Assembly: GCA_002269645.1 (NCBI GenBank)
Contig: NIVC01000364.1
Coordinates: forward strand, 558,001-622,000
Source of the DNA: Macrostomum lignano
Lineage: Eukaryota
Reading direction: 5' to 3'
DNA length: 64,000 nucleotides
Part shown: positions 6,801-57,679 of the stretch, one piece after another
How the letters are laid out: the number at the start of each line of letters is the position of its first letter
Numbering within the stretch: position 1 is the first letter of the stretch
Made by a program: the position numbers and the translations under genes
Notes under the pieces: model-generated
What the model was told of the DNA's origin: nothing
What the model saw: only the letters and a program-made list of their open reading frames with translations
Database searches by the model: none

Positions 6801-9800
6801 TCTCCAGCCGACTGCCAGGCGGACCAGTCCGTCCGCGACCGTCAGGGCAACACGGCGTTGCACCGCGCCATCCTGGAGGAATCGTCGCCGCACATCCTCG
6901 CCCTGCTCCGCTGCAGCGACGAGGCGGCGCTGAACGCGCAGGGCCACGAAGGCCGGACACCGCTGCACCTGGCCGTGGCCAATCAGAACCGCCTGGCCAT
7001 GAAGCTGCTGCTGGAACGCGGCGCATTCGTCGACTTGCCAGCCGACAATGGCCGGACAGCCATCGACCTGGTGATGCAGCAGGGCAGCCCAGTTCTGCTC
7101 AGCGACCTGTCCACCTTCTACACGCGGGAAGTGTCTCGCACGGTCCACGCCAAGAGCTACAAGGAGCTGCTGTCTGAGCCGGACTTTCACCAGTTCCTCG
7201 GCTTCCTGCAGGCGGTGGACAATGAGTACAGAGTGTGCCGGGTGAAATCGCCCGAGCGGCTGAGCGAGTTCGAGCAGCGGGCCCTGCTTGAGCAGCTAGT
7301 TGCCGACCAGAAGGTCAGATTGGCTGCAGCTGGATTGGTTGGGGGGGGGGGTTCATGACATTTGACTGTCACTGTCTGACTGTCACTGTTTGACTGTCAC
7401 TGTTTGACTGCCACTGTTTGACTGTCACTGTTTGACTGCCACTGTTTGACTGTCACTGTTTGACTGCCACTGTTTGACTGTCACTGTTTGACTGCCACTG
7501 TTTGACTGTCACTGTTTGACTGTCACTGTTTGACTGTCACTGTTTGACTGCCACTGTTTGACTGTCACTGTTTGACTGCCACTGTTTGACTGTCACTGTT
7601 TGACTGCCACTATTTGACTGTCACTGACTGTCACTGACTGTCACTATTTGACTGCCACTGTTTGACCGTCACTGTTTGACTGCCACTGTTTGACTGTCAC
7701 TGTTTGACTGTCACTGTTTGACTGTCACTGTTTGACTGCCACTGTTTGACTGCTACTATTTGCCTGTCACTGTTTGAAAAATGGTAAATAATGGTATCTA
7801 AACCTTCAACAAGTTTTACTGTTTTGTGCATTCAAATTTGTATTACATTGGAAGCCGTCCCAGACTCCAGTGACATTAATTTGTATATCATTGCACACGG
7901 CAACTAACTGCACAGCAGGTGTTCGCACTTCAGCATACGCTCGTACAGCGACATACAAGTTGATAGCAGGTTGTATTGAGGCAGCGAGTGTTGTGACAGC
8001 AATTCTCAACTTATGCCATGTTTTAAACTATATACGCTACATGCTCGAGTGTATGCACTTAAGTGTGAGTACGTATTTAGGTACTTAGTGTTCCTGCAAC
8101 CTTCTAATTGAATATTGATCTTTTCTTATTGAAAACCCTCGATAATAGCTGGAATATGCGGCTTTTCACTCGGCTCAGACTCTATGATTTCAGTCTTATA
8201 AATTATAGGATCAGGGGTCAGTGTGATCTCTGGTATGCGTTTACAAGATTCTATCTTCTCTATCACCTCTCTCCTCTCTCCTCTCTCCACTTCTCTCCTC
8301 TCCTCTCTCCACTTCTCTCCTCTCCTTTCTCCTTTCTCCTCTCTTCTCTTCTCTCTCCTCTCCTCTCCTCTCGCCTCTCCTCTGTCTCCTCTCCCCTCTT
8401 CCCACTCTCCACTTGCCCCTCGCCTCAACACAAGTTCAAAAAGCTAGCAACCCCTGCTCGATCGAATCTCACAACTGCACTGACAATGAGTGAATAATCA
8501 TAATCAAGCGCATTCCCCCATCAACATCAAAATTGCTAGACTGGCTCTGGCTCATATTAAAGATGCGGATTCTCCCTGTCAGGTGGACCTGGTAGAGTTC
8601 CGCGATCTCGCCACCCGCCTGGCCCGGACCGAGCTGGCGCACGTTCTGGTGGACAACGAGGACGCACTGGAGAAGACCGCCGCCCTGGTGCTGCGCTACG
8701 TCCTGCTGCGCGAAGACATCGGCCTGCTGTGCCGTCTGTCAGCCTGCGGCATCCTCTGGACAGCCGTGGCCGAAGTGATCGAGTCCCGTCTGGACAGCGT
8801 CTACCTGCACACGCCCGAGCGCGGTGTCAGCCGCCTGGTGCAGAACCTCCGCCAGAGCTTCGTGCAGGCCGGCCGGCTTCGCCGAGACGCTCTGGCCAGT
8901 CACTATGGAGCCGAGTGCTCTGCGCACCTGCTGCCGGCCTACCGGCCTGACTACTGCCCCGATGTGTCCTACCTGCGCCATCCCATGGACACCTTGGCCG
9001 TGTGGTCTGTGCTCACCGGCAGGTTCCAGCTGACTGAGATGCTCATCCTGTGAGTCACTCTCTACATTCTATATCGGATGTTGTGGATTCAGTAAATGTC
9101 TATAGATTGCGTAATTGGGATTGAGTAGATGTCTATAGATTTCTAAATTGAGGTTGAGTGGATATCTATAGAATTCTAATTTCGAATTGAGTAGATATCT
9201 ATAGATTTCTAACTTGGGATTGAGTAGATATCTATAGATTTCTAAAGTGGGATGGAGTAGATAACTATAGATTTCTAAATTAGGATTGAGTAGTTATTTA
9301 TAGATTTCTACATGTGATTTCAGTTGAGTAGATCATAGATTAAGTAGGCCATAGAGTGGATCTATAGATCGAGTGCTGGATTGGAATAAAAATCGGTAAT
9401 GGACTGGGTCCTCTGAATCCCTCCCGGACAGGCAGGACCAGTTCGACATCATCCCCCTGTCGCTGTTCTGCGCTGGCCTGCTGCGCAGCCTGCTATCGAA
9501 TCCCGATTTGACGCTGGACGATGAGGAAATCGAATTGCTGGCCTCCCGCTGCGAGTCCATCGCCCAGGAGACCGTTGAACGGGTGTACACGCTGGATACG
9601 TCCTACTGCAAACAGGTGCGGTTTAGTAATATAAGTAATACAAGTAGCGTTTTTTATCCTTTTTTCATCATAGGCAACAGTATCTAATTAGATGAAAAGG
9701 TATTCAATTACCTAAACAAAGGGATAGTTACTCCCGCCTTTTACCCAGTTAGTTTACAGAGAGACAAGCCTCACCGAATTTTGCGTCTCCTCACCAGGTG

Positions 9801-12800
9801 ACCGTGGACTACCTGCTGATGCCGCAGCCGACGTACGGCGAAGCCTCCTGCATCGAGCTGGCCGCCAACAACAAGTCGGCCAGGTTTCTGCAGACAGCCG
9901 CCGGCCAGACGGCCCTGGATAAGAAATGGTACGGCTGCCTGTTGAACATCAGGCCGAGCCTGCGCGAGGCTGTCATCTGGCTGGGCATGGTGCCCGGCAA
10001 CCTGCTGGTGCCCATGCTGCTGGTGTACTTCGACGAGCAGCGCATGCTCGAGGAGCGGCGGCATCGTGGCGGCCCGCTGGACTCCGGCGGCGGCGGTGCC
10101 GGAGGCGCTGGCGGCGGGGGTCGCGGCGGTGACGAGACCTGCGAGTTCCTTGTCACCGCCAAGCGGGCCGAGTGCGAGGCGGCCGCCAACGCCAAGGCGG
10201 CAACTGCGGCGGCGAATGTGGAGGTGCAGTTCACGCCTTCTGGCAAGACTGCCACAACTGCTGTGGGGACCAAGGTTTGTTTACAGCTGCAGTTCATTTA
10301 AGAATGCAAGCACCCTCTCGTAGCCTAAGTCATGGCGCTCACGTAACCCGGAACCTGGTGTACCTTGCAATCTTACATTTTAATTAACTCGATTCCTAGG
10401 TATCTAGGCTTCACCACCTCTATTTTAGGTATGCAGGCTCCGTCATCTTCATCTCCAGGTACTCAGGCTCCGTCATCACCTTCATCCCCAGGTACCCAGG
10501 CTCCGTCACTACCATCTCCAGGTACCCAGGCGCCGTCACCATCCCCAGGTACCCAGGCTCCGTCACCATCCCCAGGTACCCAGGCTCCGTCACATTCATC
10601 CCTAAGTACCCAGGCTCCGTCACCACCATCTACAAGGTGCTCAGACTCCGTCATCACCATCCCCAGCCCCCAGGTACCCAGGCTCCGTCACTTTCATCCC
10701 CAGGTACCCAGGCTCCGTCATCACCATTCCCAGGTGCTCAATCTCCGTCATCATCATCTCCAGGTACCCAGGCTCCGTCACCTTCATCCCCAGCTCTCCA
10801 GTATCGGCCAGCTCTATCCCCAGATACCCAGGCTCCGTCACCTTCATCCCCAAATACCCAGGCTCCGTCACCTTCATCTTCAGATACCCAGGCTCCGTCA
10901 CCTTAATCCCCAGATACCCAGGCTCCGTCACGTTCATCTTCAGATACCCAGGCTCCGTCACCTTAATCCCCAGGTACCCAGGCTCCGTCACCTTAATCCC
11001 CAGGTACCCAGGCTCCGTCACCTTAATCCCCAGGTACCCAGGCTCCGTCACCTTAATCCCCAGGTACCCAGGCTCCGTCACCTTAATCCCCAGGTACCCA
11101 GGCTCCGTCACCTTAATCCCCAGGTACCCAGGCTCCGTCACCTTAATCCCCAGGTACCCAGGCTCCGTCACCTTCATCCCCAGGAAGCCATCATCAAGCT
11201 GGCCAGCCCATTAAAAGCGCCCAACTCTATTTACCAGGCCCTGACAGACCCTGACGACCAGCCGGAGGAGCGGCGCAGTCTGCTCGGCGGGTCCAAAGTC
11301 AGCCTGACCTCCTCGGAGCGGCAGTTGCGCAATCCTCACCTCCGCCGCCTGCGCCAGTTCTTCCGCCTGCTGTACGGCTTCTACAACATACCGGCGGTGA
11401 AGTTCCGGTATCACGCCCTGGCCCACGCCAGCCTGCTAATGCTCCTGTCGTACGTTCTGGTCATCGATTTCGAATACAGCCTCAACACGGCCGAGGCTGC
11501 GGCTTATTGCATCATCTGCGGCTACCTCATTGAAGAGGTTGGCGAGCTGATGCAGTGCGCCATGTACACCAGGCTGAGCGACTACTTTCGGAGCAAGTGG
11601 AACTACATTGACATTGCCGCACTGTTCACCGCGGTCATTGGATTCTTCTTGCGCATGGGCAAAGTTGCCGGACACATGGACACTGTGGAGCAGAGGCTCA
11701 CCATGTCGTTTAATGATCCCGGATGGTACTTGGCCAGGCTGTTTCTGGGTAAGTGAGGAGCCTGAGGGGCTGCGGCCCGGGTCCTTCAGTGTCTCTCCCT
11801 GGTCCTTCAGTGTCTCCCCCTGGTCCTTCAGTGTCTCCCCCTGGTCCTTCAGTGTCCCCCCTGGTCCTTCAGTGTCTCCTCCCCTGGTCCTTCAGTGTCT
11901 TCCCTTCCTATCCTTCAGTGTTTGGGGATTTGGAAATTTTGAAAATGGATTTTTAATTTGGGGATTTCCAATTGCAAATGGGTGCCTGGATCCTAACTTT
12001 CACAACGCCTAGTATTCAATTAAGCAAATTTGATTGCTCTGTGAAATTTGGGACCCTTGTGAAGCTCAGGTTTAGTTTGGGGTTTATGAAGTTTAGGGTC
12101 TATGAAGTTTAGGTTTTTTGATGTTTAAGGTTTATGAAGTTTAGTGTTTATGAAGTTTAGGGTTTATGAAGTTTAGGGTTTATGAAGTTTAGGTTTTATG
12201 AAGTTTAGGTTTTACGAAGTTTAGGGTTTATGAAGTTTAGGGTTTATGAAGTTTAGGGTCCATGAAGTTTACGTTTCACAAAGTTTAGGGTTTATTAAGT
12301 TTAGGGTTTGTGATGAAGGTGAATGCTAGTATTTTAGGCGTTGTGAAAGGGTTTACAAATGGTTTGTGAAAGAGCACCCTATTGTGGTGTTTTCGAGATG
12401 TGGAGTTCAAGATTTTCATGCACACACATTATACTACTATACACCGCCTGCAATCAGTAGCGTATGAAGCCCATCCGGCTGTAAACTGCCAGCCTCTTAG
12501 CCTCATCAGCAACATCATCATCCCGCAGGCATATCCTGTTCCCTATACTGGATCAGGCTGTTGTACATCTCAACTGTGCTGGAGACTCTCGGGCCCAAGC
12601 TGAAGATGATGGCCAAAATGATCACCCAGGACCTGTTCCCATTCCTGTTCATCCTATTCATATTCATATTCGCCTTTGGCGTGCTCATGTACGGCCTGCT
12701 GTTTCCCAACGGTTATTACGCTTGGAACCCGGAACAGATGACTGTGCCGAACATCCTGCTGGGCATGTTCCGGATCTGCTTCTACAGCATGGTTGGCGAC

Positions 12801-16484: not shown

Positions 16485-17722
16485 AGTGTTCCTTTGTTCT
16501 CCTGTTCCCTTGTTCCACTATTCCCCTGTTACCCTGCTCCCCTGTTCCCCTGCTCCCCTGTTCCCCTGCTCCCCTGTTCCCCTGCTCCCCTGTTCCCCTG
16601 TTCCCCTGTTCCCCTGCTCCCCTGTTCCCCTGTTCCCCTGCTCCCCCTGTTCCCCTGTTCCCCTGTTCCCCTGCTCCCCTACATGTTCCCCTACATGTTC
16701 CCCTGTTCTCTTGTTTCCCTGTTTCCCTGTTCCCCTGTTCCCCTGTTCCCCCTGTTTCCCTGTTCCCCTGTTTCACTATTCTCCTGTTCCCCCTGCTCCC
16801 CTGTTCCCTGTTCCCCTGTTCCCCTGTTCCCCTGTTTCAGTATTCTCCTGTTCCCCCTGTTCCCCCTGTTCCCCTGTTCCCCTGTTTCCCTGTTCCCTTG
16901 TTCCACTATTCCCCTGTTCCCCTGTTCCCCTGTTTCACTAATCTCCTGTTCCCCTGTTTCCCTGTTCCCCTGTTCCCCCTGTTTCCCTGTTCCCCTGTTC
17001 CCCCTGTTCCCCTGTTCCCCCTGTTTCCCTGTTCCCCTGTTCCCCCTGTTCCCCTGTTCCCCTGTTCCCCTGTTCGCCTGTTTCACTATTCTCCTGTTCC
17101 CCCTGTTCCTCTGTTCCCCTGTTCCCCCTATTCCCCTGTTCCTCTGTTTCCCTGTTCCCTTGTTCCACTATTCCCCTGTTCCCCTGTTCCCCTGTTCCCC
17201 TGCTCCCCTACATGTTCCCCTGTTCTCTTGTTTCCCTGTTTCCCTGTTCCCCTGTTCCCCTGTTCCCCTGTTCCCCTGTTCCCCTGTTCCCCTGTTCCCC
17301 TGTTTCACTATTCTCCTGTTCCCCCTGTTCCCCTGTTCCCCTGTTCCCCTGTTTCACTATTCTCCTGTTCCCCCTGTTCCCCTGTTCCCCCTGTTCCCCT
17401 GTTTCCCTGTTCCCCTGTTCCACTATTCTCCTGTTCCCCCTGTTCCCCTGTTCCCCTCTTCCTCCTGTTCCCCTGTTCCCCTGTTCCCCTGTTCCCTTAT
17501 TCCCCTGTTCCCCCTGTTTCCCTGTTCCCCTGTTCCACTATTTCCCTGTTCCCCCTGTTTCCCTGTTTCCTTAGCCTGTTTCCCTGTTCCCATGTACCTC
17601 CTGTTTCCTGTTCCCCTGTTCCACTATTTGCCTGTTCCCCCTGTTTCCCTGTTGCCCTGTTCCACTATTCCACTATTTGCCTGTTCCCCCTGTTTCCCTG
17701 TTCCACTATTTCCCTGTTCCCC
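16485..17722. repeat. Pyrimidine-rich satellite with 8-bp core, overlapping the protease stop codon
   Basis: (TTCCCCTG)n with CACTATT variants. Confidence 0.95.
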
Positions 17723-19992
17723 CAGAGCAGATCATGTTCATCTGGCAACGGCTTTTCTTATTGCGCGGAATGCACAGAGTGCCGGGCATCAACAGCAGCC
17801 TGGCCGAGTGGCTGCCGTTGCTGCATCGCACAGGCCGGCAGAGGTAGCGGGTCGTTTTCGGCGGCGACAGAATCTTGGCGTGGGCGGTTGGCCCCGCGAA
17901 CGCCAGCTGGCGCATGTGGCGGCACTGGTCCTCGGCTGAGCCAGCAGGACCCTCCGGCACCCAGAGCTGACTGGCTGGGTTGCTAAGCTTGCGCAGACAT
18001 CCGGCTCTCGAGCTGGATAAGAACTTTTTAATTTGACTCCGCGAAGCTGCCGAATATGTGAATAGGCGCGACAGGCGAGACAGGTGGGCGGGACGTGACT
18101 GATCGCTCTCCATCAGGTAGTTCGCCTCCCTGCTGCTGTTTGGCGGCGAGTCTGTGGCTCCTGGAAGATAGCAAGCGGAATTTTGTGGAAAATCCCCGAG
18201 CTTCCTTGCATCTCTGTCTCTCTTGACTCTCCTGACACTTTCTGTATCAGCATCTCTGTCACTCCTGCTGACTCTCCTGACACTTTCTGTATCAGCATCT
18301 CTGACTCTCATGACTCTCCTGACACTTTCTGTATCAGCATCTCTGTCACTCCTGCTGACTCTCCTGACACTTTCTGTATCAGCATCTCTGTCACTCCTGC
18401 TGACTCTCCTGACACTTTCTGTATCAGCATCTCTGTCTCTCCTGCTGACTCTCCTGACACTTTTTGTATCAGCATCTCTGTCTCTCCTGCTGACTCTCCT
18501 GACACTTTCTGTATCAGCATCTCTGTCTCTCCTGCTGACTCTCATGACACTTTCTGTATCAGCATCTCTGTCTCTCCTGACACTTTCTTTATCAGCATCT
18601 CTGTCTCTCCTGACACTTTTTGTATCAGCATCTCTGTCTCTCCTGCTGACTCTCCTGACACTTTCTGTATCAGCATCTCTGTCTCTCCTGCTGACTCTCA
18701 TGACACTTTCTGTATCAGCATCTCTGTCTCTCCTGACACTTTCTGTATCAGCATCTCTGTCTCTCCTGACACTTTCTTTATCAGCATCTCTGTCTCTCCT
18801 GACACTTTCTTTATCAGCATCTCTGTCTCTCCTGACACTTTCTGTATCAGCATCTGTCACTCCTGCTGTCTCTCCTGACACTTTCTGTATCAGCATCTCT
18901 GTCACTCTTGCTGACTCTCCTGACACTTTCTGCATTACAACATCGTGAAGTTTGTGGATTTTTTGCAAGGCACTCACCAAGCACGTGACCAAGCTCGTGA
19001 GCAATGAGCCTGGCAGTGGCGGCCGGATACAGGTCGGTGATCACTGACCGAGAGTTCGGCTGGCAGGCTGAAGCCACATAGGACAGGCCGATCAGGCGGG
19101 CCCCCTTGGGCTTCGGGCCCAAGCTGGCCGGCGGCAGAAGGCTCCGGTCCCGGGTGATCAGCATGTGGTGATCGTAGCCGCCCCTATCGTCCTTTTGCCA
19201 GTCGGCCAGAGCCTCCATGCTGAGCAGCAGCTGCAGGGCTGGGACTCGCTGTCCGAACTGTCTCAAATAGGCAATTCCAGGCGCCTTCAGGCTGGCGTAG
19301 GCCCTCGAGCGGCCCAGCACCCAGCGGATATGGATGCCGACAGCTGCCAAAGCCCGGTTGACTATGCCAAATACGGCACCGAAGTAGCTGGTGGCGGCCG
19401 CTTGTGCACCGTCTGGCGATGAAGAGAAATGACGCCACACCGACGGGTCCAGATCCAGGCGAAGCTCCAGCACGGCTGCTCCGCCGCTGCCTGAAGCGTC
19501 ACTCCCTCCTGACGATGTCAAGGTGACTTCTTTGGCAGACTTGCTGCTTGAATTCAGCTTGCAGGCGAAGCCACGCCCGGCAGCTCCGTGAATAGCCAGC
19601 GAGATGACGCTGTGACGGCTACCGTTCGAGTTCATTCGAACCAGACCTGCCAGTAGGTCGGGACCGCCGAATTTCGGGTGCGCAACAGTTGCCGTAGCTT
19701 GAATTGAACTACTGGACTTCAGTTTGTACCGGTCGGTTCTCACCTTGCCGCTCTTCCCTACCGTGGATACTGAGGACGAATGGCGTTTCAGCAACAGGCG
19801 CTTCGGCATCAGGCGGCCGGCTGTCGAGTTTTGCTTCTTTAGCAGAGGCGGAGCCAAATTAAGCTGAAGCTGGTTGCCAGATGCTTTCCAGATGACGCGC
19901 CACGCATGATCAGAGTTGGCGCAGTCGGTTGACGCTGCGCTAGCGGCTCCGATGCATACTAGTAGGATCAATAACCACTGCAGATGATGCAT
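17706..19992 (-). CDS. Secreted M12B (reprolysin/ADAMTS-like) metalloprotease, 489 aa: signal peptide, pro-region, catalytic domain, Cys-rich domain; exons 19992-18978 and 18160-17706
   Basis: Hydrophobic N-terminus MHHLQWLLILLVCIGAASA; DHHMLIT and LIGLSYVASAC strands. HELGHVL-G|GTGAGT donor and TATCTTCCAG|GA acceptor (both phase 1) give HELGHVLGATD. Met-turn NYLM, terminal helix SRSQIKKFL..GCL, then EDQC...C...C...GTLC...C...C. Confidence 0.85.
18208..18932. repeat. 45/33-bp minisatellite in the protease intron
   Basis: CTCTCCTGACACTTTCTGTATCAGCATCTCTGTCACTCCTGCTGA. Confidence 0.95.
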
Positions 19993-20756: not shown

Positions 20757-22620
20757 TAAATGCATCCGAACTACATCTGGACTCATAATACGTATAGGAT
20801 CGCTACTTTATTACGTCGCCGTGATCTGCCGCAATCGATCGATCGATCTCATTTGTAGATGGGAAAGGCAATAACTTTCTATCCAAAATTGCACACATGG
20901 ATTGAAACATAACGCGGAGGCAGTATGATATGGACATTTAGATATGTAAAAAAATCTCTCGCTTTCTCGCCATCACTAAACAACAAAATACCCGGTTAGA
21001 CTGCCGAACAGCAATTAGACTGCCGAACATTTAAATGCCATAAATTGACTGCCAACCCTAATCCTATCCCTAACTTTCATGTATATTTGTACATGTAAGT
21101 TCACATGTAAATCGACGGCGTAAAATGTCTGGCAGCAGTAAAAAGTCGTCGCTTCCGCAGTCAGGCGCTGCAGTCTACTTGCTAAAACGGCCGCTGGTAT
21201 TCAAAATTCGGAAACCCCTTATGTATGCCCCCTCACCCGTCACCCGGGCCAAAAAATAGCTAAATTTACACTGCATATGTTACTTGTGCATATTTCTGTC
21301 ATTATATGACGATTCTTTTTCTGATGCATGCAATACTGATTACTGATTAATTACAAAGAGCTTAATTTCACCGTAGACTGGCCTTCAGAAATAAACTCTG
21401 GATCCGCGCCTGCCAGGCTGCTTTAGGAGTAAATTTTAGAACCCATGACCTTGCAGTGATACCTCTTCAAAAGTCAAAACCAACCTCTGCTAGCCTTAGC
21501 TTGAGCCCCGAGTTATGTGACCGCACCGCAAAGTTTAAATCCAGGAACCGTCATGCCAGCTTCTAATGCGTAACTTCTCTGCTAAAACCTAGCTTTCAGT
21601 TATATATTTAGGTTATAGGTTCCTTTAGTAGGTTATTAATTATAGCAACTTTGTTATTATGTAGCATTCTTTTTCTTCAAAACTTTTGCGCAGATGTTTA
21701 AACTAAGAAATGAATCCCGGCGCCGCCCGCCGCAACCGCATCCCGGTAGTACTTGCCGCCCGCTGGCCGGTAGCACCATAGCAGCTGCGATGCTCATTTC
21801 GAATGTGCAAATAGCTTCTTAATATCATTTTTAAAGATACGGATTATTAACACCAATATATCCAATAACGGATTATTAGCACTAATAAATATTTTTACGA
21901 TTACAATATGCTATGATATGGTGTCATGGACCTAGTTTACGAATCAGCCAGTCATCATAGGCCTACTACTTGTCTGTCATAGGTAGCTCGAATAGCTCTC
22001 AGCCATTAGCCATACCATCTCAGGCGATTTCTCAGCACTCATCAAAGAGCCGTAGGCCTAGCCCATCTAAATATCCGTGGCTAAGCTAATCGAAGCTTAG
22101 CTAAGCTAATCGAATCTAAGCTAAGCTATCGACAGAGCTTGATTTTGTAACTTAGTTATTACTTGACTAGGCCTAACTTTCAAAATTGAGGTGTAGGCCT
22201 ATTTTTACTCAGACAAAAAGATTTTTAAATTAAATAGAAAACTTTCAAAATGTCACAAGACAAGAGTCTCTACTTCTAACTTCCTAAGGCTAGTGCTTTA
22301 AAATGTAAAATATGATGACCAGTGGCCCAATTATATTAGGCCCCAATAGCTTTGGGAATCAAAATCAGGTCTTTTAGCCTATTATAGGCCTAGTTCATAG
22401 GTCCATATTGTAGACAAGAAATATACAATAGGCCTATAGTATAATACTAAAAATATCAGCAGACAATTGTACTAATAGGCTAGTGATAGTGATAAGGGTG
22501 ATAGGCATAGATAATACTAATACTCATTATTTGCATAGTACCATATAAATTGTAGTGTAGTTATTTACATGGTAACAAAAATATATTAGTTTTATACACT
22601 GTGTAGTACCTTTAGATCCG

Positions 22621-23342
22621 GGTATACTTGCAAACTTTTTATTCGTCAACTGTGTTGACAAGTTTACTATATTTCTAATTCTAGGTAAGCCTGGGTAAAT
22701 TCGTCAACTTAAGTTTAGTATAAAAAAGTATAGCGACGTAATTTGTAAAACTAGTATGCCATTGAAATTGAGTTAAAGCTACTGTAAATTAATTATATAT
22801 ATATTTACTTTCACTTTTACTTTTATGATTTTTACAGCATTTGTTTAGCTTTATTGCCAATATTGCCAATAAACTTCGTTGCCTTTGTTTTGTTGCCTAA
22901 TATTTTCACTTTTACTATTTACAATTTGCTACAGATTTGTTAATCTAAATTTTTCTTATAGAAATGCTGTGCTTTTTGCTGGGTTTTTTTAATGCTTTTT
23001 TGATTCACCTTTGTGAAATGTATAATGTACAAAACCTAATTAATCAAAAATTGAAATTTCAATAATAAAAAATTGAAATTGAATATATTTGAGTATAATA
23101 TTCAAGTATAAAAACTTAAATCTGCACTTTTTAATAGTGGACTTTGTGGGTGCTCAGATCATTGGCACAAATTGGAGCTTACTTAATTGAATAGTTGTTT
23201 AGTGAATCATGTAATCACGAATGTAATCATAAATCATGAATGAAACAACATGCAGTTGATAAATTTTACCAGTAGACAAATTTACTAGTTGACAAATTTA
23301 AATTGACGGCAGTTGATGAATAAAAATTTGATGAGTCTACCA
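22621..23342. mobile_element. Degenerate TIR element (MITE-like), family unassigned
   Basis: GGTATACTTGCAAACTTTTTATTCGTCAACTG at the left is the approximate reverse complement of CAGTTGATGAATAAAAATTTGATGAGTCTACC at the right. No clear TSD. Confidence 0.45.
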
Positions 23343-24173
23343 CCACCCATACCTTTAGCTATACCTATAGTTTAGTACCATGTTATATTTGACTATAAAT
23401 CTATCTTTTTAAAAGTGAATAAGTTATAGGCCTAATCTAATCTCATTCATTTTAAAAAAACCTTTGTACTTTGTAGTATTAATGCCAATGGTATAAGCTA
23501 ATAAAAAATGCTAAGCCTATACTATATATCATATCTAAACTATTTACCAGCTTTGCTTTTAGTTAGTTGAAATTCATTATGAAAATTAAAGATATAGGGA
23601 CAAATATTGAGTAGTCCATAATAAGATAACTATTTATAATAAGGTAAGATATTTATTTTAGTATATAAATAAAACTGTCAATATTTACATAGTTACCAAG
23701 CAAAAAATAATTTCCTAGATGATATCAAATATAATTAAATATAAAATATATTTAAATCTGAAATAATCACTAATTCTACAAAATTTGAATCAAAAGACCT
23801 ATTCCTATTTCCCTTTTTTCCTTATAGGAAAAGTTAAAGCTGCAGACAACATCCAACATGCTTTCAAAATTTTTCTAAAGTGCAATGCGCGCAGCATATG
23901 CGCGCGCTGCCCTTTCCTGCTGGCTGCTGCTCTAGCAAATAAATATAAAACATGGAAGAGGGACTAATACCTTTGTAGAAGGGGCCTATACACTTGTAAT
24001 ATCTGGTATAATGCTTAGAAATGTTCCAAAATTTGGATTTTTTAAGAGTGAACTTTGATTTGGAAAAAATTTGGAAGTCAAAATTTTGGAAAGTGTGTAA
24101 AAGAGTGGCTAAAAATAAACTAATTTGTGCTATATATACATGTATTATATACATTATAATATATATTAGGATT

Positions 24174-24318
24174 TAGGTTAAGGATCTTAACCCTAAAAAG
24201 GGCCCTATTGGCCCTATATTATTATATTAATATAGTATATTTATATAATTATATAATTATACTAATATATTATAATAGGGCCAATAGGGCCCTTTTTAGA
24301 GTTAAGATCCTAAACCTA
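24174..24318. repeat. Near-perfect ~145-bp hairpin (foldback)
   Basis: TAGGTTAAGGATCTTAACCCTAAAAAGGGCCCTATTGGCCCTAT pairs with ATAGGGCCAATAGGGCCCTTTTTAGAGTTAAGATCCTAAACCTA around an AT-rich loop. Confidence 0.8.
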
Positions 24319-24609
24319 TGGGGAATCTAAGACCCAAGACTTTAGGATTGAGATCAAGATCCTATCTGACCTTTTAAAAATTTAATTTTAAAAATTTAAG
24401 TATTAAAATTTATTAATACTTATTCAATTCCATAATAAATTATAAGCCAGATAAGATTGCAAGTCTTATCTTATTGAAGAACTTGTTTAGGTATTGGTAC
24501 TAGTAACCACATAATTGGTTCTTCATTTTTGAAAGAGTATACAAGGGGTATAGTTTTGGCAATAGGGTACTAAAATCTATTGCAAGCTCATTATTCTAAA
24601 AGTAAGGGT

Positions 24610-26076
24610 TTATAGTCCTTTTATGTAGTATCCACCATTAGAGGTCAGACGGGATCCCGATCCCGAAATCTCGGGATCCCAAGGAAAATTGAATTCTCGC
24701 GGGACCAGAATCCCGACCATAAAAAACTCGAGATTCGGGAATAGGTCTTTCAATTAATAATTTATAGAATTAGTGATTACTTGAAGGTATTTTGCTTTAA
24801 CTTGTACTCGTTACATTATTTACTTTGTTGGTTACAAAACTTCATATCAATTTCATTGTGTTTTACTTCTTGATCTTGACAATCTTTTCTCAATTTTGTT
24901 TAACTTTACATGGACAATACACTAAAAGACCTGATCCCGATTCCCAAATCCCGATCCCAATCCCGAGAAAAAAATTATTCCCAATCCCAATCCCGCCCAA
25001 AGATTTCAATCCCGTTTGACCTCTATCCACCATGCTCTATGTACTTCTAATGCCTCCGTAGCCACAAATCAAAGGTGCCGCAATATTCTAATTCAGTGAA
25101 TACCCTCAACTCTGAATTGATAGCGTATGCCAGGTCTTGCTATCTTTGAAATTTGCACCTAGCCAGCCTCTCAATCAGTTTTGAGAAGGCCCAGAAGTTG
25201 CACGGAGCCAAGTCAAGGCTATAGGGTGGGTGGCAAACAGTTTTTAGCCAGTTTTCCTCTAGACAAGCTGAAGTCATCGCCACAATATGGCTTGACACAT
25301 TGTCATGGTGAAGGTAGATGCAACCTGACTCTAAGCATATGCATTGATTTTTCCACATGAAATCAATGACAGCTGGCAGGGCAGTGCTGGTGTAGAAACT
25401 GGCATTCACATTCTAGCCTTTGGGCACCATGACAACAGCTACTAGGCCACAGATGCTGAAGAACACAATGAACATCTGCTTGCACGAGCAAAATCTTAAT
25501 TGCAGAACTGTTTGATGCTCTTTATCAGCACTAATCCAAACCTTATTCTGGCTCTTGTTGGGCACCTGGAAGTAGTAAAACCATTTCTTGTCACCAATGA
25601 CAATGTCAGAGAGGCACTTAGTGCTGCTAGAACCAAAGCAATGCAAGAACTCTTGACTACAACAAACCCGCTCTTAGAGCTGCTTCTCAGTGAGCTGATG
25701 GGGCACCCAATGAGCTGTGATCTTCCTGAGCCCTAGCTGCTCATGCAGGATGGTAAAAATGCTGCCCTCAGATATGTCAAGTGTCTGGCTCAGCATGGCA
25801 ACAGAAATGTTTGGGTCACTCTTCAACCACCAGCGATTGCATAGTGCCAATGTTGCTCTTGGTCATGGCTGTGCTCGGCCTCCCAGATCGAGGGTCATCA
25901 CAGAGGCTGCTCCTGCCAGTGCCAAAAGCCTCAATCCATTATGCAATGGTGCAATAAGATGGAGCCTGATCCCCTATCACCTATGCTAAGTCGGCATGGA
26001 TTTTGGTGGCATTTTCTCCAAGTTGTGCACACATAAAAATGTAGAAGCGCATGTTTTCTGAGCTGTTATTTTCCAT
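24610..26076 (-). pseudogene. Mariner DD34D transposase pseudogene
   Basis: MENN..RFYIF..LGENATKIH, DDPRSGRPST, WVP(H)QL, IVIGDKKW, HHDNV, HPPYSLDLAPCNFW, C-terminal IEHGG/YYIKGL*. Multiple stops and frameshifts. Confidence 0.9.
24639..25025. mobile_element. hAT-type non-autonomous element (MITE), 387 bp
   Basis: TIRs TAGAGGTCAGACGGGA and TCCCGTTTGACCTCTA; exact 8-bp TSD TCCACCAT (24631-24638, 25026-25033); subterminal CCCGAT repeats. Confidence 0.88.
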
Positions 26077-26753
26077 ATTTTGTCAGAAGCTAAAATGTAG
26101 GTATGGTGTATTTTGCTTGAGCCAAAGTATATCTGCATATGCAGTTGCCAAAACTTTTTGAATGCCCCTCGTAATATAGATGATTAGTATTTTGATCTGT
26201 AGGCATGCACTAGACAAGGATGATACCAAAGAAGTTATAGCAAACAATGAGTATTAGCTTCTTAGTATCCTTGTTTTGCTTTAGAAATGTTGGCCTAAAA
26301 AGTTAGTAGAGCCTCTTGGCTACCACTGCATTCTGCAACTTAAGATTCTACTTGTAAAAGTAAGCCCATCTTGTCTAATGTCATAATATACTACAAGAAC
26401 TCATTGCCTTCTTGTCAAAAGCATCGCAATAGTTGTTTGGTGATGGCAACTTGTTGTCTCTTTTATAACTATTATGTCAGCCAAAGAGGGAAGACAGTAA
26501 TAAGAAAAATTTGCAATGTTAATGATAAAAAGTATAAATAACTTAAGTGTGCAAGAAAGGATTAAAAAAATACTAGCTGCAGGGTAGCTGTGGTAGGCTT
26601 AACAACTGCAGACATTAGAGCAATGTCTATAGATCAATTGCACAAAATTTTAAGACACCCTTGTATATATATTTTACAATATATTATATTATAAAAGTTA
26701 TAAACAATATGATTTAAAAAGTAAAAAAAGTCTTAAAAAGTGCATAAAAAGTA

Positions 26754-28620
26754 CCTTAGTGCGTCCAAAAAGTTCTTAGACACCCCTCCTATCTATGCAT
26801 CTGTTCAATTGATTTTTATAAAAATTCACACAAACATGGACCTATATGTAATGAGTTCAGTGCTTAAGTTTCAGCTTAATTGGGTTGACAGAGCAAAAGC
26901 AATCGATCATTTACTGACGAACCTACAAAATTAGCAATATGATTTTAAACTCAATAAAATGTAAAAGTTAATGAGCAAACAGTTCAAACTGACAAGTTTC
27001 AGAACTTCAAAAAACAGATCACCAATTGTGAAAATCTTCAGAAGAATCTTCATTCTGTCAAATGCACTTGTCATATCACATCGGCAACTCCTCAGTCCTC
27101 AATCCACGCCGACGACATATCCCTAGGTGTCGCTCTGATCAGCCCCTCAGCAGCAGTTTGCAGCTCAGTTTGCAGCTTGGCGAACCGCTGGCCTCTTGGA
27201 CTCATTCTGCGTGCTGAATCAGCTCTTGAACTCGTCTCCCAGAGCTGAAACTGCCGCCCTTTGTTGCAAGCAGACTTTGTATTGGTGATTCTTTTGCTGT
27301 TAAACCATCTGAGGCTGGTTCTGCATCTCAGCATCTGAATCTCTGCGCACTCTGGCTATGTTGCTATGCTGCTTACTGCTTTGTTTTTTTGCTCTTTAAT
27401 CTATGGCTAAACCTTCACAGCTTGTATTAGTATTGAATTAATTAAGGTATTTTTCAATACTCAGCGAAAGCAGTGATATTTTTCTGAATAATTTTTATAA
27501 AAATGAGCTGCAATGTCACCACTGGAGTCCAGATTTGATTCTCTTCAAAAATCATATTGCTAATTTTGTAGGCTCGTCAGTAAAAGATCGATTGCTTTTG
27601 CTCTGTCAACCCGATTAAGCCAAAACTTTAGCACTGAGTTCATTACATATTGGTCTATGTTAGAGCTCGAACGGGATCCTGATCCTGATCTCGAATTCTC
27701 GGGATCCCGAAGATTTTTCGGGAATTCGGGATTGGGATCCCGAAGGCTTAGAGAACTCGGGATTCGGGAGCACAATAGATTAATAATGAAGATGATGCTT
27801 TCAACAATCAAGAGCAGTAATCAATACTAAGCTAATTTTTGTAACAGCAACTATAGATATGTTGAAAGTCTGACCTTGAATTCACCAAATAAAGCAGCAG
27901 ATTTTTACTTAGTAACAGATTTGTAAAGAGTTGTACTCGTAAATAACGAACTAACAAGTAATGATAGTTTGTTAGGAATAAACAAATTTAATGCTTGTTC
28001 CTATGATTCGTACGACAGAAACTAAAGTGTCTGTAGAAGTGTCTGAATAAGTGTCGGCGAATGTTTAATACGTTTTTCATGAAGCGATTCCAGAAACAGA
28101 ATTTTACAAGAAAAAGCAGTATAACTAACGCAATTCAATATTACATTAATGCAGAACAGTCGCCTTTCGTGCGATTTTTAGCCACCTTGTAACTCTTACT
28201 TTCAGAAAAAGTCTACAATGGCTCTTGATTCCTTTTTATTTAGGCGCTCGAAAGTTAGCTATACTTTGCAAAAAGGGTCTGGATCAAGAATTGACAATTA
28301 GTATTGACTATTAGGGCATTAGGCTAGAGCTATTAGATCAACCATCAAGGCTGAATAGCATAGATAGTCAGATAAAACTATCCTTGAATCCTTGATTCAT
28401 TAGTTAGTAAGTTATATATTCCCAGATCCCGGATTCCCAAATCCCGAATACTAATCCCGAATCCCGATCCCGAAATTATTTTCAATCCCGATCCCGCCCG
28501 ATCCCAAAAATTCTGCTCCCGTCCGAGCTCTAGTCTATGTTTCTGCATTTTTTCATCAAACTCAATCAAACAGATGCAGAGATATGAGGGGTGTCTAAGA
28601 ACTTTTTGGATGCACTAAGG
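26754..28620. mobile_element. Non-autonomous Tc1/mariner-like element with ~195-bp TIRs, right TIR split by a hAT MITE
   Basis: TA-CCTTAGTGCGTCCAAAAAGTTCTTAGACACCCC... at 26752 mirrors ...GGGGTGTCTAAGAACTTTTTGGATGCACTAAGG-TA at 28622. The inverted match continues over 26754-26947 versus 27548-27660 plus 28541-28620. Confidence 0.8.
27661..28532. mobile_element. hAT-type non-autonomous element, 872 bp
   Basis: TIRs TAGAGCTCGAACGGGA and TCCCGTCCGAGCTCTA; exact 8-bp TSD GTCTATGT (27653-27660, 28533-28540); CCCGAT/ATCGGG subterminal repeats shared with 24639-25025. Confidence 0.88.
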
Positions 28621-29627
28621 TATAAAATGTAACTTGGGTTTTTCAATTGGTAACTTGGTATTAAGATGCAAAATTGCCTCTGAGGTCTAATTTAATGATA
28701 TTATTTAAAAATTTAGGATACTATAGCATCTCTATCATATAAAAAGCCTAGCTTAAAATAATATATGCAATATATTTGCTTCTAGGGTTTGCTACTCCCG
28801 ACTAAAGACTATCTTTTCCTTTTACTGATATATAGCAGTTACCCCCTTTAATGCTTTTTATTATCAAATAAGCTATTTAATTTTATTAACTACTTAACTC
28901 TATTATTTGACTATTAAGAAATTTATAAATTTTTAATATAGGAAAAATAGGGTTAAGTATTTGATTTGAATATCAAGTTAATTAAAGTACTTATGAGGAT
29001 TCTAGTATAGGCAGTATAAAAATAAAAGCTATATAGTAGAAAGGGTCTTTAGATTTAAAGACCAGTTTTAGTATATGGATATAGACATAGCATTTTCATA
29101 GAAAATGATTGCATTTATTAGGTAAAATTTAGGCCTTGCATATGTATTCTAATAATAAATAATTTATGTTCTATATGCAAAATTTATCCATTTTATTAAT
29201 CTTTAAATTTTTATATACTAGTTATAAAAATAATAATTATCCTTTAAATATTTCTGCTAAGAATTGGTGTCTATGCTTTTTATTACTTACACTTTAGCAC
29301 CCCAATTTGCTTAATAGCATACAACTTTTCTGTTCAAATTAATTCATGCATGTAGCATAAATTTATTGTTAAATGCCAATCTTTGTTATTTACTTATTTT
29401 CTTTTATAAACATACTATCAGTTTGGTAGTTAGTACCTTTTGCATTCTTGGCATCTTTTATTTGCCTCAGTGTCATTGCTGATTTCCTAGTTTGGTCTCT
29501 ACTAGTGTGCTCAACTGTGCATAGCAAAAAGCTGTGTGCACCCTAGCATGCTTAAAAAGGACAAGGAGACATTGTCATACAACTAGTACAAGGCATTACG
29601 GCTAATTCTACCAACTCCCATGTTTGG

Positions 29628-29783
29628 GCGCAACCTATGGATTCACTCGGCTATTTCTATTGGCAACACACACATATAAGTCGCTATTGGACAGAATAGT
29701 AGTCACGTGACTGCTCTCAGCCAATAGCGACTTACATGTGTGTGTTGCCAATAGAAACGGCTGGGTGATTCCCAAGGTTGCGC
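29628..29783. repeat. ~156-bp palindrome centred on GTCACGTGAC
   Basis: Arms GCGCAACCT..CTATTGGCAACACACACAT..AAGTCGCTATTGG and CCAATAGCGACTT..ATGTGTGTGTTGCCAATAG..AGGTTGCGC. Confidence 0.85.
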
Positions 29784-30137
29784 ATGTATGCCAACTCCCC
29801 TGAGCAGGCATACAAGTAGGCAGATATGCATATATTATGACTTGTATTTACACTTTGCTGTGCATTGGGGGATTGGCTTTCAATGACATTAATTGCATAT
29901 ATATAAATATTTAATAAATAACATAAATATATAAATAAATATAATAAATATATAAATACAATTCATAAGCCTTAGTTAGTCAAGAATTATATTTGTGTAT
30001 ATTTTGAACATAGTATATATGCATGTATTAAAATAAAAACTAAGGACTACATTTTCATAATTGATAGTCGTGAACAATATGAATCTGTCAAAACTTAGAA
30101 TTAAGTGCACAACATTCATTTCTGTTCATTCCTGAAG

Positions 30138-39740: not shown

Positions 39741-40316
39741 TTTTGCCAGATTCTCGAGCTACCTCAAATTCCATTGATTCAGGAAACAAATAGTTAATCT
39801 GATTATTATATGGAAATCGCGAGTTACTATTACTACTGCTAGCATCTGTTAAGTTTTTTTGACCCTTACTCTCGATGTGATGTCACTCCCGAATGGAAAG
39901 ATTGTTCCAATAATGGACCAGTAGGTCTTTTCTTACAATGAAGAATTTCTTTCTAAAGGCTAAAATAAATGAAGTGTGAATTGCGAATTGCTTTGTTGGC
40001 CAACACCGAAGGCCTGAGTTGCTATCCCTGCATGTCCTATAGGCTCATTCGGGCTTCGGTCAGTTCTATAGTTGCCAGGCGGGGTCTTAAGGATTCCGCA
40101 AAAAACTTCAGTACGGATGATCAGCGATGCGCGATACAGAGGGTCAAGCATGACGACTGGAGCTCATTGTGTCCCAGTATTTGATCCTGATCTTAACTCT
40201 GTCTATATGCGCCTGGCCCTTGTTGATTGCGCAACTTGAGCTCGATTTTTCTTGTCCTATGTGTCAGACAGTGGCCGTGCCTTCTGTAGGCACTACCAAC
40301 CTAGTTCTTGTCCCTT

Positions 40317-52275: not shown

Positions 52276-52888
52276 TCGCACAGAGCGCACACATTAGTAC
52301 ATATAGCTCACTTTTTGAGCAGTTTCTGAGTAGATTTCGCTACTTTCTACACATTTACGTTTCAGTGCCCATTTGCCCCAGAGAATTTGGACAATATGTT
52401 CCAGCTCCAGTTATGAGAGATCTATTTAACAGTCTGCTGAATGCTAAATTTTTTTAAAAAGGCCCTAAAGGCCCCTCTCTCTTGTGTTCTCTGATTGTTG
52501 TGGAGGCCCTGCGCCTTGCCTGTCTGTGTGCACAGCCGAAATCCCTGGCCTCGGGGCGAATAGGCAGACAGACAGACAGAGAGACAGACAGACAAGCAGA
52601 CAGAGTGTCCACTAGCTGGGTGTTTGCCGGAGCCACTTAGCACCTCGGGCGGCGGATGCTGAGGATGAGGAACCGCTAGCGAGTTTCTCTTTTCAGTCCC
52701 CAGAAAACCGGGCGCCCAGCTTGAGTTTGCTCAGCTCCGGCGTGGGAGAATTTCCCCCAGATTGCTGTTCGGCTTTTAGCTCGAGTATTACTATGATGAA
52801 GGAGAGAGAAGATTCTGGGAGTTGGTAGGGAGGAGAGAAAGTGGCCAGAGGCTACTCAAAGAAAATGTGCAACCTGCTACTTACTCAC

Positions 52889-56960: not shown

Positions 56961-57679
56961 TCGTAAACACTGAGTCGGTGGATCACGTGATTATTATTGT
57001 TGACTCAATATTGCAATTCACCTGAATCACCCCCATGGTTATGGGATCATTTTTTGCAAAACTCAAACAAAAGAAACTCGGCATGATTCCCAAATGTCGC
57101 CGCAGTCTTGGATACCGCGTGGGTCGCACAGCAGGACCGGATGATGATAAAGTGCAAATTGCAGGCCAAGCTCTTGGAGGCTACCAACTATCTAATAGAG
57201 TCTGAGATATGGTGCTCTCTGGGCCGTGAAAATGGGAAATATTCTTGTTGGCATGCGGAGCGCACAAAATGGGGAGTTGAAAGACCCGGATACTCCCCAG
57301 TGTCCTGTGACTTCTTCCTCAGATCTACAGGAGATAATTGCTCACAGATGTTGACCCCTTCAATCTGCAATTTAATACTCAAAGTTGATGAGGCGAGGGG
57401 TCATTATAAAGCAGAGGAAAGTGAGACTCCTTGATCCTGAGCACCCAAACAAGTATTAAATATTGCCGGTCAGTATCCAAGTCTTTTTGAGTCCAATATA
57501 ATCGACCTGTCCATCAAAGGTCGCAGCGGGATTTCGCAACCTAAACAGGACCGAGAAGCCAGGCGAGCTGGGAGTCTTTATTCGGTGCACCGGGGGTTTG
57601 TGCAGCCTGCAGCTTGCCGGCAACAGGCGAGGGGCTCGCTGAGACTCATCGACCGAAAGGGAGGCCTGGAGGAAGAGAT

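What the first reader, a model, noticed from the sequence alone, without database searches (positions are those of the whole stretch)
18100..19010. Reprolysin-type protease with Asp as third zinc ligand (HELGHVLGATD), visible only after splicing
Seen: the zinc motif is split by a phase-1 intron. Joining 18978 to 18160 gives HELGHVLG-ATD, then the Met-turn NYLM. The catalytic Glu is intact. The Cys normally following the motif and the Cys of the SxCS helix start (here YSAASR) are both absent, suggesting paired loss of a disulfide. Established: metzincins use HExxHxxGxx(H/D); the Asp form is typical of bacterial snapalysin and immune inhibitor A and, among animal reprolysins, of mammalian ADAMDEC1 (HELGHVLGMPD). 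Inference: an independent invertebrate origin of an ADAMDEC1-like active site on a short secreted ADAMTS-like scaffold with no TSP1 or TM domain.
Basis: partly seen in the sequence, partly recalled or inferred. Interest (0 to 1): 0.7.

Follow-up and report, generated by a model that had tools for sequence, protein, structure and literature searches.

The report
Flatworm reprolysin protease with Asp zinc site
A real, spliced gene of the flatworm Macrostomum lignano encodes a small secreted ADAMTS/MIG-17-like metalloprotease whose third zinc-binding histidine is missing, leaving an aspartate in its place as in mammalian ADAMDEC1; this is a modest new example of a known oddity, and its activity is untested.

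Summary
A minus-strand gene (ATG 19992, stop 17706) has one 817-nt GT-AG phase-1 intron (18977-18161). Removing it gives HELGHVLG|ATD followed by the Met-turn YLM. The 489-aa product is identical to GenBank PAA84710.1 of Macrostomum lignano, whose gene models come from RNA-seq. Two paralogous copies use the same junction.

Each exon half matches an M12B profile on its own. The AlphaFold model best matches the ADAMTS-1/4/5 catalytic plus disintegrin-like domains. All 36 distant relatives carrying HExxH keep the third His followed by Asp or Glu (35 HD, one HE). None has Asp at the ligand position.

A profile built without this protein places its Asp on the D of "HD" and a gap at His. Loss of the His codon therefore fits better than an H-to-D substitution. 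One active-site disulfide is lost as a pair. dN/dS is 0.17 (P=0.003), which argues against decay.

There is no TSP1, PLAC or TM domain, but most of the relatives checked also lack TSP1, so that scaffold is not new. Zinc binding and activity are inferred only. No orthologue was found outside this species.

Verdict: a new, independent member of the ADAMDEC1-type Asp-site kind. Moderate interest.

The parts
18978..19992 (-). Coding exon 1 (codons 1-338 plus the first base of Gly339). It encodes the signal peptide (res 1-~21), a ~150-aa pro-region, and the N-terminal two thirds of the M12B catalytic domain up to HELGHVL-G.
   Evidence: There is an in-frame stop 5 codons upstream of the ATG. The product is identical to PAA84710.1. 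Residues 172-330 score 39.0 bits against the profile of relatives, versus 4.5 for the best shuffle.
18985..18999 (-). Codons for H332-E333-L-G-H336: zinc ligands 1 and 2 and the catalytic Glu.
   Evidence: H332, E333 and H336 are invariant columns. The AF2 helix 323-337 has pLDDT about 96.
18161..18977 (-). Phase-1 GT-AG intron of 817 nt. It splits the Gly339 codon of HExxHxxG.
   Evidence: Donor GTGAGT and acceptor CTATCTTCCAG. The paralogues have the same sites with a 1218-nt intron. The transcript-derived gene models remove it.
18208..18932 (-). 33/45-bp minisatellite that fills the intron. In one frame it reads (DADTESVRR..RDR)n.
   Evidence: TRF; translations. It is stop-free and in frame in L001/L002 but frame-broken in the window.
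17706..18160 (-). Coding exon 2 (rest of Gly339 to K489, plus stop TAG 17708-17706). It encodes A-T-D342, the Met-turn, the C-terminal helices of the catalytic domain, and a degenerate ADAMTS-type disintegrin-like (ADAM_CR) domain.
   Evidence: Residues 340-398 score 38.3 bits versus 11.4 for the best shuffle.
18150..18152 (-). GAC codon of Asp342, at the position of the third zinc ligand (HExxHxxGxxD).
   Evidence: all 36 relatives with HExxH have His there, followed by Asp in 35 and Glu in one; the profile aligns it with the D of HD.
18111..18113 (-). ATG codon of Met355, the Met-turn methionine (N-Y-L-M).
   Evidence: M355 is an invariant column; see also the alignment.
17718..17978 (-). 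Residues ~400-486: Cys-poor ADAMTS-type disintegrin-like (D*) domain. It keeps 6 of the usual 8 Cys; C2 and C5 are missing.
   Evidence: Alignment. Foldseek alignments of 320-350 columns span the M and D* domains of ADAMTS-1/4/5. The custom D* profile gives only 11.0 bits, and 1 of 998 scored shuffles was higher. Pfam ADAMTS_CR_2 was not detected.
16487..17722 (-). 8-bp (TGTTCCCC)n microsatellite. It holds the last codons, the stop codon and the 3' region, and causes C-terminal tails of different length in the three copies.
   Evidence: TRF. Protein lengths are 489, 506 and 514 aa.

Best explanation
This is gene Mlig020008 (copy g3) of the flatworm Macrostomum lignano. It is a transcribed two-exon gene for a 489-aa secreted protein made of a signal peptide, a pro-region, an M12B (reprolysin/adamalysin) catalytic domain and a reduced ADAMTS-type disintegrin-like domain. 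Shown: the exon structure; homology of both exon halves to M12B; the ADAMTS-like fold; the motif HELGHVLGATD with intact catalytic Glu333, Gly339 turn and Met355 turn; His at the third-ligand position in every detectable relative; loss of one conserved active-site disulfide as a pair; and purifying selection between copies. Inferred: the ancestral GxxHD lost its His codon, which moved the family's signature Asp into the third-ligand position and gave the same spacing as ADAMDEC1 and snapalysin. Asp342 then completes a His2-Asp zinc site. The protein would be a working extracellular endopeptidase with weakened or narrowed activity and altered sensitivity to inhibitors, by analogy with ADAMDEC1. 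Removal of the intron is needed to make any such site, because the unspliced message of this copy terminates before the third ligand and the Met-turn.
For: Sequence and splice sites. The product is identical to PAA84710.1, and all three annotated copies carry GATD. The GenBank models of this assembly derive from RNA-seq/StringTie/TACO/TransDecoder (PMC5730564). Pfam Reprolysin scores 23.3 bits against a cut-off of 20.8. The best PDB sequence match is ADAMTS-1, E=9e-5, aligned across the junction. HMMER against 1.84 billion representatives returned only M12B relatives, best E=1e-8. Both exon halves match the profile independently. AF2 with an alignment gives pLDDT 88-96 in the catalytic core, and the Foldseek top hits are ADAMTS-1/4/5, E~2e-12, TMt 0.68. 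None of the 36 relatives has Asp at the ligand position. An independent profile puts the gap at His and matches D to D. Scores are 74.2 bits for the real sequence, 78.5 for D342H and 85.7 with His inserted. Paired Cys loss. Window versus paralogue shows 8 synonymous and 4 non-synonymous changes, dN/dS 0.17, P=0.003. ADAMDEC1 with HEXXHXXGXXD is proteolytically active and escapes TIMP1-3 (PMC5174729; PMC4885070).
Against: No metal-binding or activity data exist, and I could not inspect model coordinates, so the Asp-zinc geometry is untested. The loop after D342 is modelled with only moderate confidence (pLDDT about 67). I recognised no furin-type RxxR site at the pro/catalytic boundary, no canonical Cys-switch motif and no Pfam propeptide domain, so activation is unexplained. 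The protein is extremely divergent and I found no orthologue outside M. lignano. That pattern also fits a fast-evolving binding protein. I did not see RNA-seq reads themselves, and found no expression data for this gene in the supplements searched.
Confidence: 0.6

Rival explanations
1. Pseudoprotease. Loss of the third His left a site that binds zinc poorly or not at all. The protein would survive as a secreted binding or decoy protein, as catalytically dead ADAMs and ADAMTS-like proteins do, and not as an enzyme.
For: The third His is universal in relatives. The protein has also lost an active-site disulfide and two D*-domain cysteines. I recognised no furin site or Cys switch. It is highly divergent, with no orthologues found.
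Against: HExxH, the catalytic Glu, the Gly turn, the Met-turn and an acidic residue at exactly the ligand spacing are all retained. Dead M12B members usually lose the Glu or the His residues (my own knowledge of the family). ADAMDEC1 shows that this motif can be active. Cysteines were lost only in pairs and dN/dS is 0.17. Those last two points show constraint on the protein, not on catalysis specifically.
Confidence: 0.27
2. Intron-retaining (exitron-like) isoforms matter. In the paralogous copies the unspliced message would encode a 912-aa protein with a 406-aa charged repeat inserted between Gly339 and Ala340. In the window copy it would encode a truncated 381-aa protein. Splicing would then switch the zinc site on or off.
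For: The 1218-nt intron of L001/L002 is in frame and stop-free, so the whole gene span is a single ORF. The repeat periods of 33 and 45 nt are multiples of 3.
Against: Two of the three frames of the repeat are stop-free anyway. The window copy breaks the frame with a repeat unit that is 2 nt short, while its exons stay intact. The region holds at least 25 other minisatellites, about a third of them with periods divisible by 3. The splice sites are strong, and the deposited transcript-derived models are spliced.
Confidence: 0.06
3. The gene is decaying or is an annotation artefact. The Asp motif would be a lesion in a dying duplicate, or a hidden exon would supply xxH.
For: It is a single-species gene in a repeat-rich, redundantly assembled genome. 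Its stop codon sits in a microsatellite.
Against: The ORF is intact in three copies with an identical motif. dN/dS is 0.17, P=0.003. The number of cysteines is even. The intron contains only the minisatellite and short flanks, with no His-bearing exon candidate in any frame. Homology runs continuously across the junction.
Confidence: 0.05

Closest known systems
ADAMDEC1 (decysin-1), mammalian M12B ADAM
   Same: Both are secreted, truncated M12B proteins: a catalytic domain plus a short cysteine-rich remnant, with no TM domain. Both carry HExxHxxGxxD, with nearly the same letters in the helix (HELGHVLG). ADAMDEC1 is active and escapes TIMP1-3 (PMC5174729; PMC4885070).
   Different: ADAMDEC1 belongs to the ADAM7/28 branch in mammals. 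The flatworm protein groups with ADAMTS/MIG-17-like invertebrate proteins, so the site arose independently. The literature describes ADAMDEC1 as an H362D replacement. Here the profile favours loss of the His codon from GxxHD. The flatworm protein also lacks the Cys pair flanking the site. The two were not compared directly, because no ADAMDEC1 sequence was available from the tools.
MIG-17-like / TSP1-less ADAMTS-like invertebrate reprolysins (mollusc, nematode, tick; e.g. Mizuhopecten 'ADAM family mig-17' OWF52072.1, Lottia XP_009066122.1, Candidula CAG5119101.1)
   Same: These are the best sequence relatives (E from 1e-8 to 1e-4). They share the Reprolysin catalytic domain followed by an ADAMTS_CR_2 (D*) domain. 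Most have no TSP1 repeat and no TM domain.
   Different: All of them keep GxxH(D/E) and the Cys-Cys pair (C348/C377 columns), and many carry a C-terminal six-Cys, PLAC-like module. The flatworm protein has GAT-D, lacks that disulfide, lacks two D* cysteines, and ends right after D* in a microsatellite-encoded tail. Identity is only about 20-35%.
ADAMTS-1/-4/-5 (solved structures 2V4B, 3B2Z, 2RJQ)
   Same: These are the best structural matches over the catalytic and disintegrin-like domains (Foldseek E about 2e-12, TMt 0.66-0.69) and the best PDB sequence matches.
   Different: True ADAMTS proteins have TSP1, Cys-rich and spacer domains, a furin site, His as the third ligand and more catalytic-domain disulfides (background knowledge, not checked here). 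None of these is present in the flatworm protein.
Bacterial Asp-type metzincins (snapalysin M7, immune inhibitor A/PrtV M6)
   Same: They share the motif HExxHxxGxxD with Asp as the third zinc ligand (PMC3890501 and PMC4815223, listed).
   Different: No homology beyond the motif was detected. Pfam and HMMER hits were all M12B. The resemblance is convergent at the level of one ligand.

Membership tests
M12B reprolysin/adamalysin catalytic domain | Significant match to the family profile | tested here: met
   PF01421 scores 23.3 bits against a gathering cut-off of 20.8, E=7e-5. A profile of relatives scores 74 bits over residues 300-398. Both exon halves are significant on their own.
M12B reprolysin/adamalysin catalytic domain | Metzincin fold of adamalysin type | tested here: met
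   AF2 core pLDDT is 88-96. All 50 listed Foldseek PDB hits are ADAMTS, ADAM or snake-venom M12B structures, E from 2e-12 to 2e-8.
M12B reprolysin/adamalysin catalytic domain | Extended zinc motif HExxHxxGxxHD (third ligand His followed by Asp) | tested here: not met
   The sequence is HELGHVLGATD-S. His is absent in all three copies and present in 36 of 36 relatives with HExxH.
M12B reprolysin/adamalysin catalytic domain | Catalytic Glu and Met-turn | tested here: met
   E333 and M355 fall in invariant columns.
M12B reprolysin/adamalysin catalytic domain | Zinc-dependent endopeptidase activity | not testable with these tools
   This needs recombinant protein, metal analysis and activity assays.
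ADAMTS proper | At least one thrombospondin type-1 repeat after the disintegrin-like domain | tested here: not met
   There is no TSP_1 hit. The protein ends 6 residues after the last D* Cys. No TSP1, PLAC or Cys-rich ORF lies downstream on the minus strand.
ADAMTS proper | ADAMTS-type disintegrin-like (ADAM_CR / ADAMTS_CR_2) domain after the catalytic domain | tested here: inconclusive
   There is no Pfam PF17771 hit. The custom profile gives 11.0 bits, exceeded by 1 of 998 scored shuffles. HMMER alignments with relatives extend to residues 481-494. Foldseek alignments cover M plus D* of ADAMTS-1/4/5, but pLDDT there is only 50-76.
MIG-17-like TSP1-less ADAMTS relatives | Pro + M + D* architecture without TSP1; secreted | tested here: met
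   The N-terminal hydrophobic signal is the only hydrophobic segment of TM strength. Domain order. Relatives show the same Reprolysin + ADAMTS_CR_2 architecture.
MIG-17-like TSP1-less ADAMTS relatives | C-terminal PLAC-like six-Cys module (MIG-17 domain order is from my own knowledge, Nishiwaki et al. 2000) | tested here: not met
   Many relatives carry CxD..C..C..CC..C at the C-terminus, and the flatworm protein stops before it.
ADAMDEC1-type Asp-site M12B | HExxHxxGxxD in an M12B catalytic domain with intact Glu and Met-turn | tested here: met
   the definition comes from PMC4885070 and PMC5174729.
ADAMDEC1-type Asp-site M12B | Common descent with ADAMDEC1 (ADAM7/28 clade) | tested here: not met
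   The best relatives and structures are ADAMTS/MIG-17-like, not ADAM: ADAMTS-1 E=9e-5 versus ADAM33 E=5.5e-3. No direct comparison with ADAMDEC1 was made.
Bacterial M6/M7 Asp-metzincins | Homology to snapalysin or InhA catalytic domains | tested here: not met
   Only Reprolysin-clan Pfam families were hit at E<=1.

The most novel reading that the evidence does not exclude
The Asp-type zinc site arose by a route different from ADAMDEC1. An in-frame loss of the third-His codon would have pulled the reprolysin signature Asp (of 'HD') into the ligand position. Loss of the disulfide that staples this loop to the C-terminal helix would have accompanied it. The result would be a functional His2-Asp metzincin in the ADAMTS/MIG-17 branch with restricted specificity or inhibitor escape. 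That would be a second, mechanistically distinct and convergent invention of the Asp site within M12B. It might be further gated by splicing of an intron that sits inside the zinc motif and is an in-frame, stop-free 406-codon repeat in sister copies.
Probability: 0.3. Interest if true: 0.55.

Novelty: new member of a known kind. Interest (0 to 1): 0.38.

Why it matters
ADAMDEC1 is described as the only mammalian ADAM with Asp instead of His as the third zinc ligand. That change is linked to restricted substrate reactivity and escape from TIMPs. An independent occurrence in a distant invertebrate branch of M12B would give a natural second test case for how a His2-Asp site tunes a metzincin. This holds especially if it arose by deleting His instead of substituting it, together with loss of the adjacent disulfide. 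M. lignano is transgenic and RNAi-tractable, so its biology could be tested. The practical importance is limited. It is one lineage-restricted, already annotated "hypothetical protein", and nothing yet shows that the site binds zinc.

Tried and rejected
- Word-index homologue searches with the full protein, with the catalytic plus D* part, and with a 14-sequence profile returned only the M. lignano cluster or three irrelevant hits. I therefore could not survey how often HExxHxxGxxD occurs among invertebrate M12B proteins, and found no orthologues in other Macrostomum species.
- Single-sequence AlphaFold failed (pLDDT 35). Only the alignment-based model was usable.
- Model coordinates are not exposed, so the Asp-zinc geometry could not be measured.
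- I found no expression data. 'Mlig020008' is absent from the full-text library and from the supplements of three M. lignano papers.
- The ADAMDEC1 biochemistry paper (PMC3774404) is not held. A MIG-17/PLAC literature search gave nothing usable on domain architecture.
- The scallop relative's locus was not on record. The snail relative's intron lies 5 nt from this one, so there is no shared intron position.
- I considered and rejected a downstream TSP1 or PLAC exon, a second copy of the gene in the window, a His-supplying micro-exon inside the intron, and coding significance of the open intron frame. For the last, chance is sufficient.
Full report
**What is in the sequence**

The feature lies on the minus strand. 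An ATG at 19992 is preceded by an in-frame stop five codons upstream. It opens a 1015-nt exon ending ...CAC GAG CTT GGT CAC GTG CTT G at 18978, followed by GTGAGT. After 817 nt comes the acceptor CTTGCTATCTTCCAG, and exon 2 starts at 18160 with GA GCC ACA GAC.

Joining the exons gives a 489-codon frame ending at TAG 17708-17706. It reads HELGHVLG|ATDSPPNSSREANYLM (H332, E333, H336, G339 split by the intron, D342, M355). If the intron is read through, the frame stops 43 codons after HELGHVLG.

**Organism and transcript support**

The spliced product is identical over all 489 residues to GenBank PAA84710.1, BOX15_Mlig020008g3 of the flatworm Macrostomum lignano. Two further copies, PAA53977.1 and PAA73422.1, carry the same HELGHVLGATD.

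The GenBank annotation of this assembly (Mlig_3_7, GCA_002269645.1) is not ab initio. It is a genome-guided transcriptome built with STAR, StringTie and TACO plus a de novo assembly. Low-expressed novel transcripts were discarded, and ORFs were called by TransDecoder (PMC5730564). The junction is therefore supported by transcript data for three copies, although I did not see the reads.

At the two paralogous loci, L001 and L002, the donor and acceptor are identical and the intron is 1218 nt.

**Is the join more than a chance motif?**

Yes. I built profiles from the distant relatives only. The exon-1 part of the catalytic domain, with HExxH removed, scores 39.0 bits; the best of 2000 shuffles scored 4.5. 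The exon-2 part (residues 340-398, without HExxHxxG) scores 38.3 bits; the best shuffle scored 11.4. Alignments to ADAMTS-1 and to the profile run straight across residue 339. The two exons encode the two halves of one catalytic domain.

**What family it belongs to**

- Pfam gives Reprolysin PF01421 just above its gathering score (23.3 against 20.8), plus weaker Reprolysin-clan hits and nothing else.
- The best solved-structure sequences are ADAMTS-1 (E=9e-5) and ADAMTS-5, ahead of ADAM33 and adamalysin II.
- An exhaustive HMMER scan of 1.84 billion representatives finds only 38 proteins at E<1e-3. The best is 1e-8.
- Of the ten I looked up, seven carry names: five molluscan proteins (Candidula, Lottia, Mizuhopecten 'ADAM family mig-17', Gigantopelta 'ADAMTS19-like', Saccostrea), a nematode reprolysin and a tick metalloprotease. 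The other three carry no source name.
- Ten relatives scanned with Pfam have Reprolysin plus ADAMTS_CR_2. Only one has a TSP1 repeat.
- With these relatives as alignment, AlphaFold gives a confident catalytic core (pLDDT 88-96) with the expected active-site helix 323-337 and C-terminal helices.
- Foldseek ranks ADAMTS-1/4/5 catalytic plus disintegrin-like structures first (E about 2e-12, TMt 0.66-0.69, 320-350 aligned columns).

The C-terminal 90 residues align to the D* domain of relatives with six of the eight cysteines. On their own they are only marginally significant: 11.0 bits, with 1 of 998 scored shuffles higher.

There is no TSP1, PLAC or Cys-rich exon downstream. The only hydrophobic segment of TM strength is the N-terminal signal peptide. 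The architecture is therefore signal, pro-region, M domain and a reduced D* domain. That is a trimmed version of the MIG-17-like, TSP1-less ADAMTS relatives common in invertebrates. MIG-17's own domain order is from my background knowledge.

**The zinc site**

All 36 relatives that contain HExxH have His six residues after the second His. It is followed by Asp in 35 of them and Glu in one, with a Cys a few residues later. None has Asp at the ligand position. The flatworm protein has G-A-T-D.

MAFFT, and also a profile built from relatives realigned without the flatworm sequence, align D342 with the Asp of 'HD' and place a one-residue gap at His. They also align N346 with the conserved Asn of HDGxxNxC.

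I scored three versions against that independent profile. The real sequence gives 74.2 bits, D342H gives 78.5, and His inserted before D342 gives 85.7. The data therefore favour loss of the His codon, by about 7 bits, over an H-to-D substitution. ADAMDEC1, by contrast, is described as an H362D replacement (PMC5174729).

Either way, the resulting spacing HExxHxxGxxD is exactly that of ADAMDEC1 and of the bacterial Asp-metzincins. The catalytic Glu, the Gly turn and the Met-turn are intact. Whether Asp342 really ligates zinc cannot be decided here.

**Disulfides**

In relatives, the columns at C348 (after the motif) and C377 (FSxCS) are at least 90% Cys. The flatworm protein has Ser and Ala there (..NSS.., YSAAS). 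It keeps the other conserved pair, C310 and the Cys of GCL.

In the D* domain the second and fifth cysteines are also both missing. If the ADAMTS pairing is C2-C5, as I recall but did not verify, that is a second clean pair loss. The mature part of the protein has eight cysteines.

**Is the gene under constraint?**

The window copy differs from L001 at 12 codons of 478: eight synonymous and four non-synonymous changes. All four non-synonymous changes lie N-terminal to residue 222. This gives pN/pS = 0.17, and the binomial P for so few replacements under neutrality is 0.003. Together with intact frames in three copies and pairwise Cys losses, this argues against a decaying pseudogene. It does not prove catalysis.

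**Unexplained or weak points**

- I recognised no RxxR furin site near the pro/catalytic boundary and no canonical Cys-switch motif. The only basic sites are KR64-65, KR69-70 and RTDR85-88, and the only pro-region cysteines are C24 and C144.
- No orthologue was found in other species. The age of the change is therefore unknown, and the gene may be fast-evolving.
- I found no expression pattern.

**The intron**

The intron is almost wholly a 33/45-bp minisatellite. In the two paralogous loci it is 1218 nt, in frame and free of stops, so the whole 2739-nt gene span there is one 912-codon ORF. That ORF would insert 406 residues of (DADTESVRR..RDR)n between G339 and A340. In the window copy, a repeat unit that is 2 nt short breaks the frame.

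Two of the three frames of the repeat are stop-free, and the window carries at least 25 other minisatellites, about a third with periods divisible by three. Chance is therefore enough to explain the open frame, and I treat intron retention as a low-probability rival.

The snail relative also has an intron inside the zinc motif, but 5 nt upstream and in phase 2. The position is near but not shared.

**Verdict**

There are two refinements. The TSP1-less short scaffold is normal for this branch of M12B. The Asp site probably arose by His deletion, not by substitution.

The best explanation is a secreted ADAMTS/MIG-17-like metalloprotease with an ADAMDEC1-like His2-Asp zinc site (confidence about 0.6). 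The main rival is a non-catalytic derivative (about 0.27).

It is a new, independent member of a known kind, found in an already annotated but uncharacterised gene. Interest is moderate.

Noticed in passing
L001:7016-8233 and L002:4016-5233 (paralogous introns); window 18161-18977: The intron is an in-frame, stop-free 406-codon repeat in both paralogous copies, so the whole gene span there is a single 912-codon ORF. The window copy is 401 nt shorter and frame-broken by a repeat unit that is 2 nt short, near 18850.
   Followed up: partly
window 16487-17722: An 8-bp (TGTTCCCC)x151 microsatellite contains the last codons and the stop codon of the protease gene. The three copies therefore end in different low-complexity tails (489, 506 and 514 aa).
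   Followed up: partly
L003:9301-11164 (Candidula unifasciata relative CAG5119101.1): The closest relative with a retrievable locus also has an intron inside the zinc motif. It lies 5 nt upstream, in phase 2 after HELGH-S (CAC AG|GTTAGA ... CCATAG|C TTG GGC). This could be near-coincident intron positions or intron sliding.
   Followed up: partly
window 1-64000: The window is packed with minisatellite arrays: at least 25 arrays with periods of 8-67 bp and up to 2.2 kb long (e.g. 30508-32264, 37488-39742, 40315-41712, 50569-52277, 57677-59012). They cause the strong local GC-skew swings and many spurious long ORFs.
   Followed up: no
window 1076-1876 (+): An ORF matches the C-terminal half of a pyridoxal-dependent decarboxylase (PF00282, E=6e-53). 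It is presumably an exon of a neighbouring gene.
   Followed up: no
window 6573-11756 (+): ORFs with ankyrin repeats and a weak ion-transport match lie here. The paralogous locus L001 has a 1166-aa Ank/TRPM2/Ion_trans channel gene next to the protease, so the neighbourhood is conserved between copies.
   Followed up: no
window 22001-30000: An AT-rich block (GC 0.30-0.39) contrasts with about 0.5 elsewhere. It contains no ORF of 150 aa or more.
   Followed up: no
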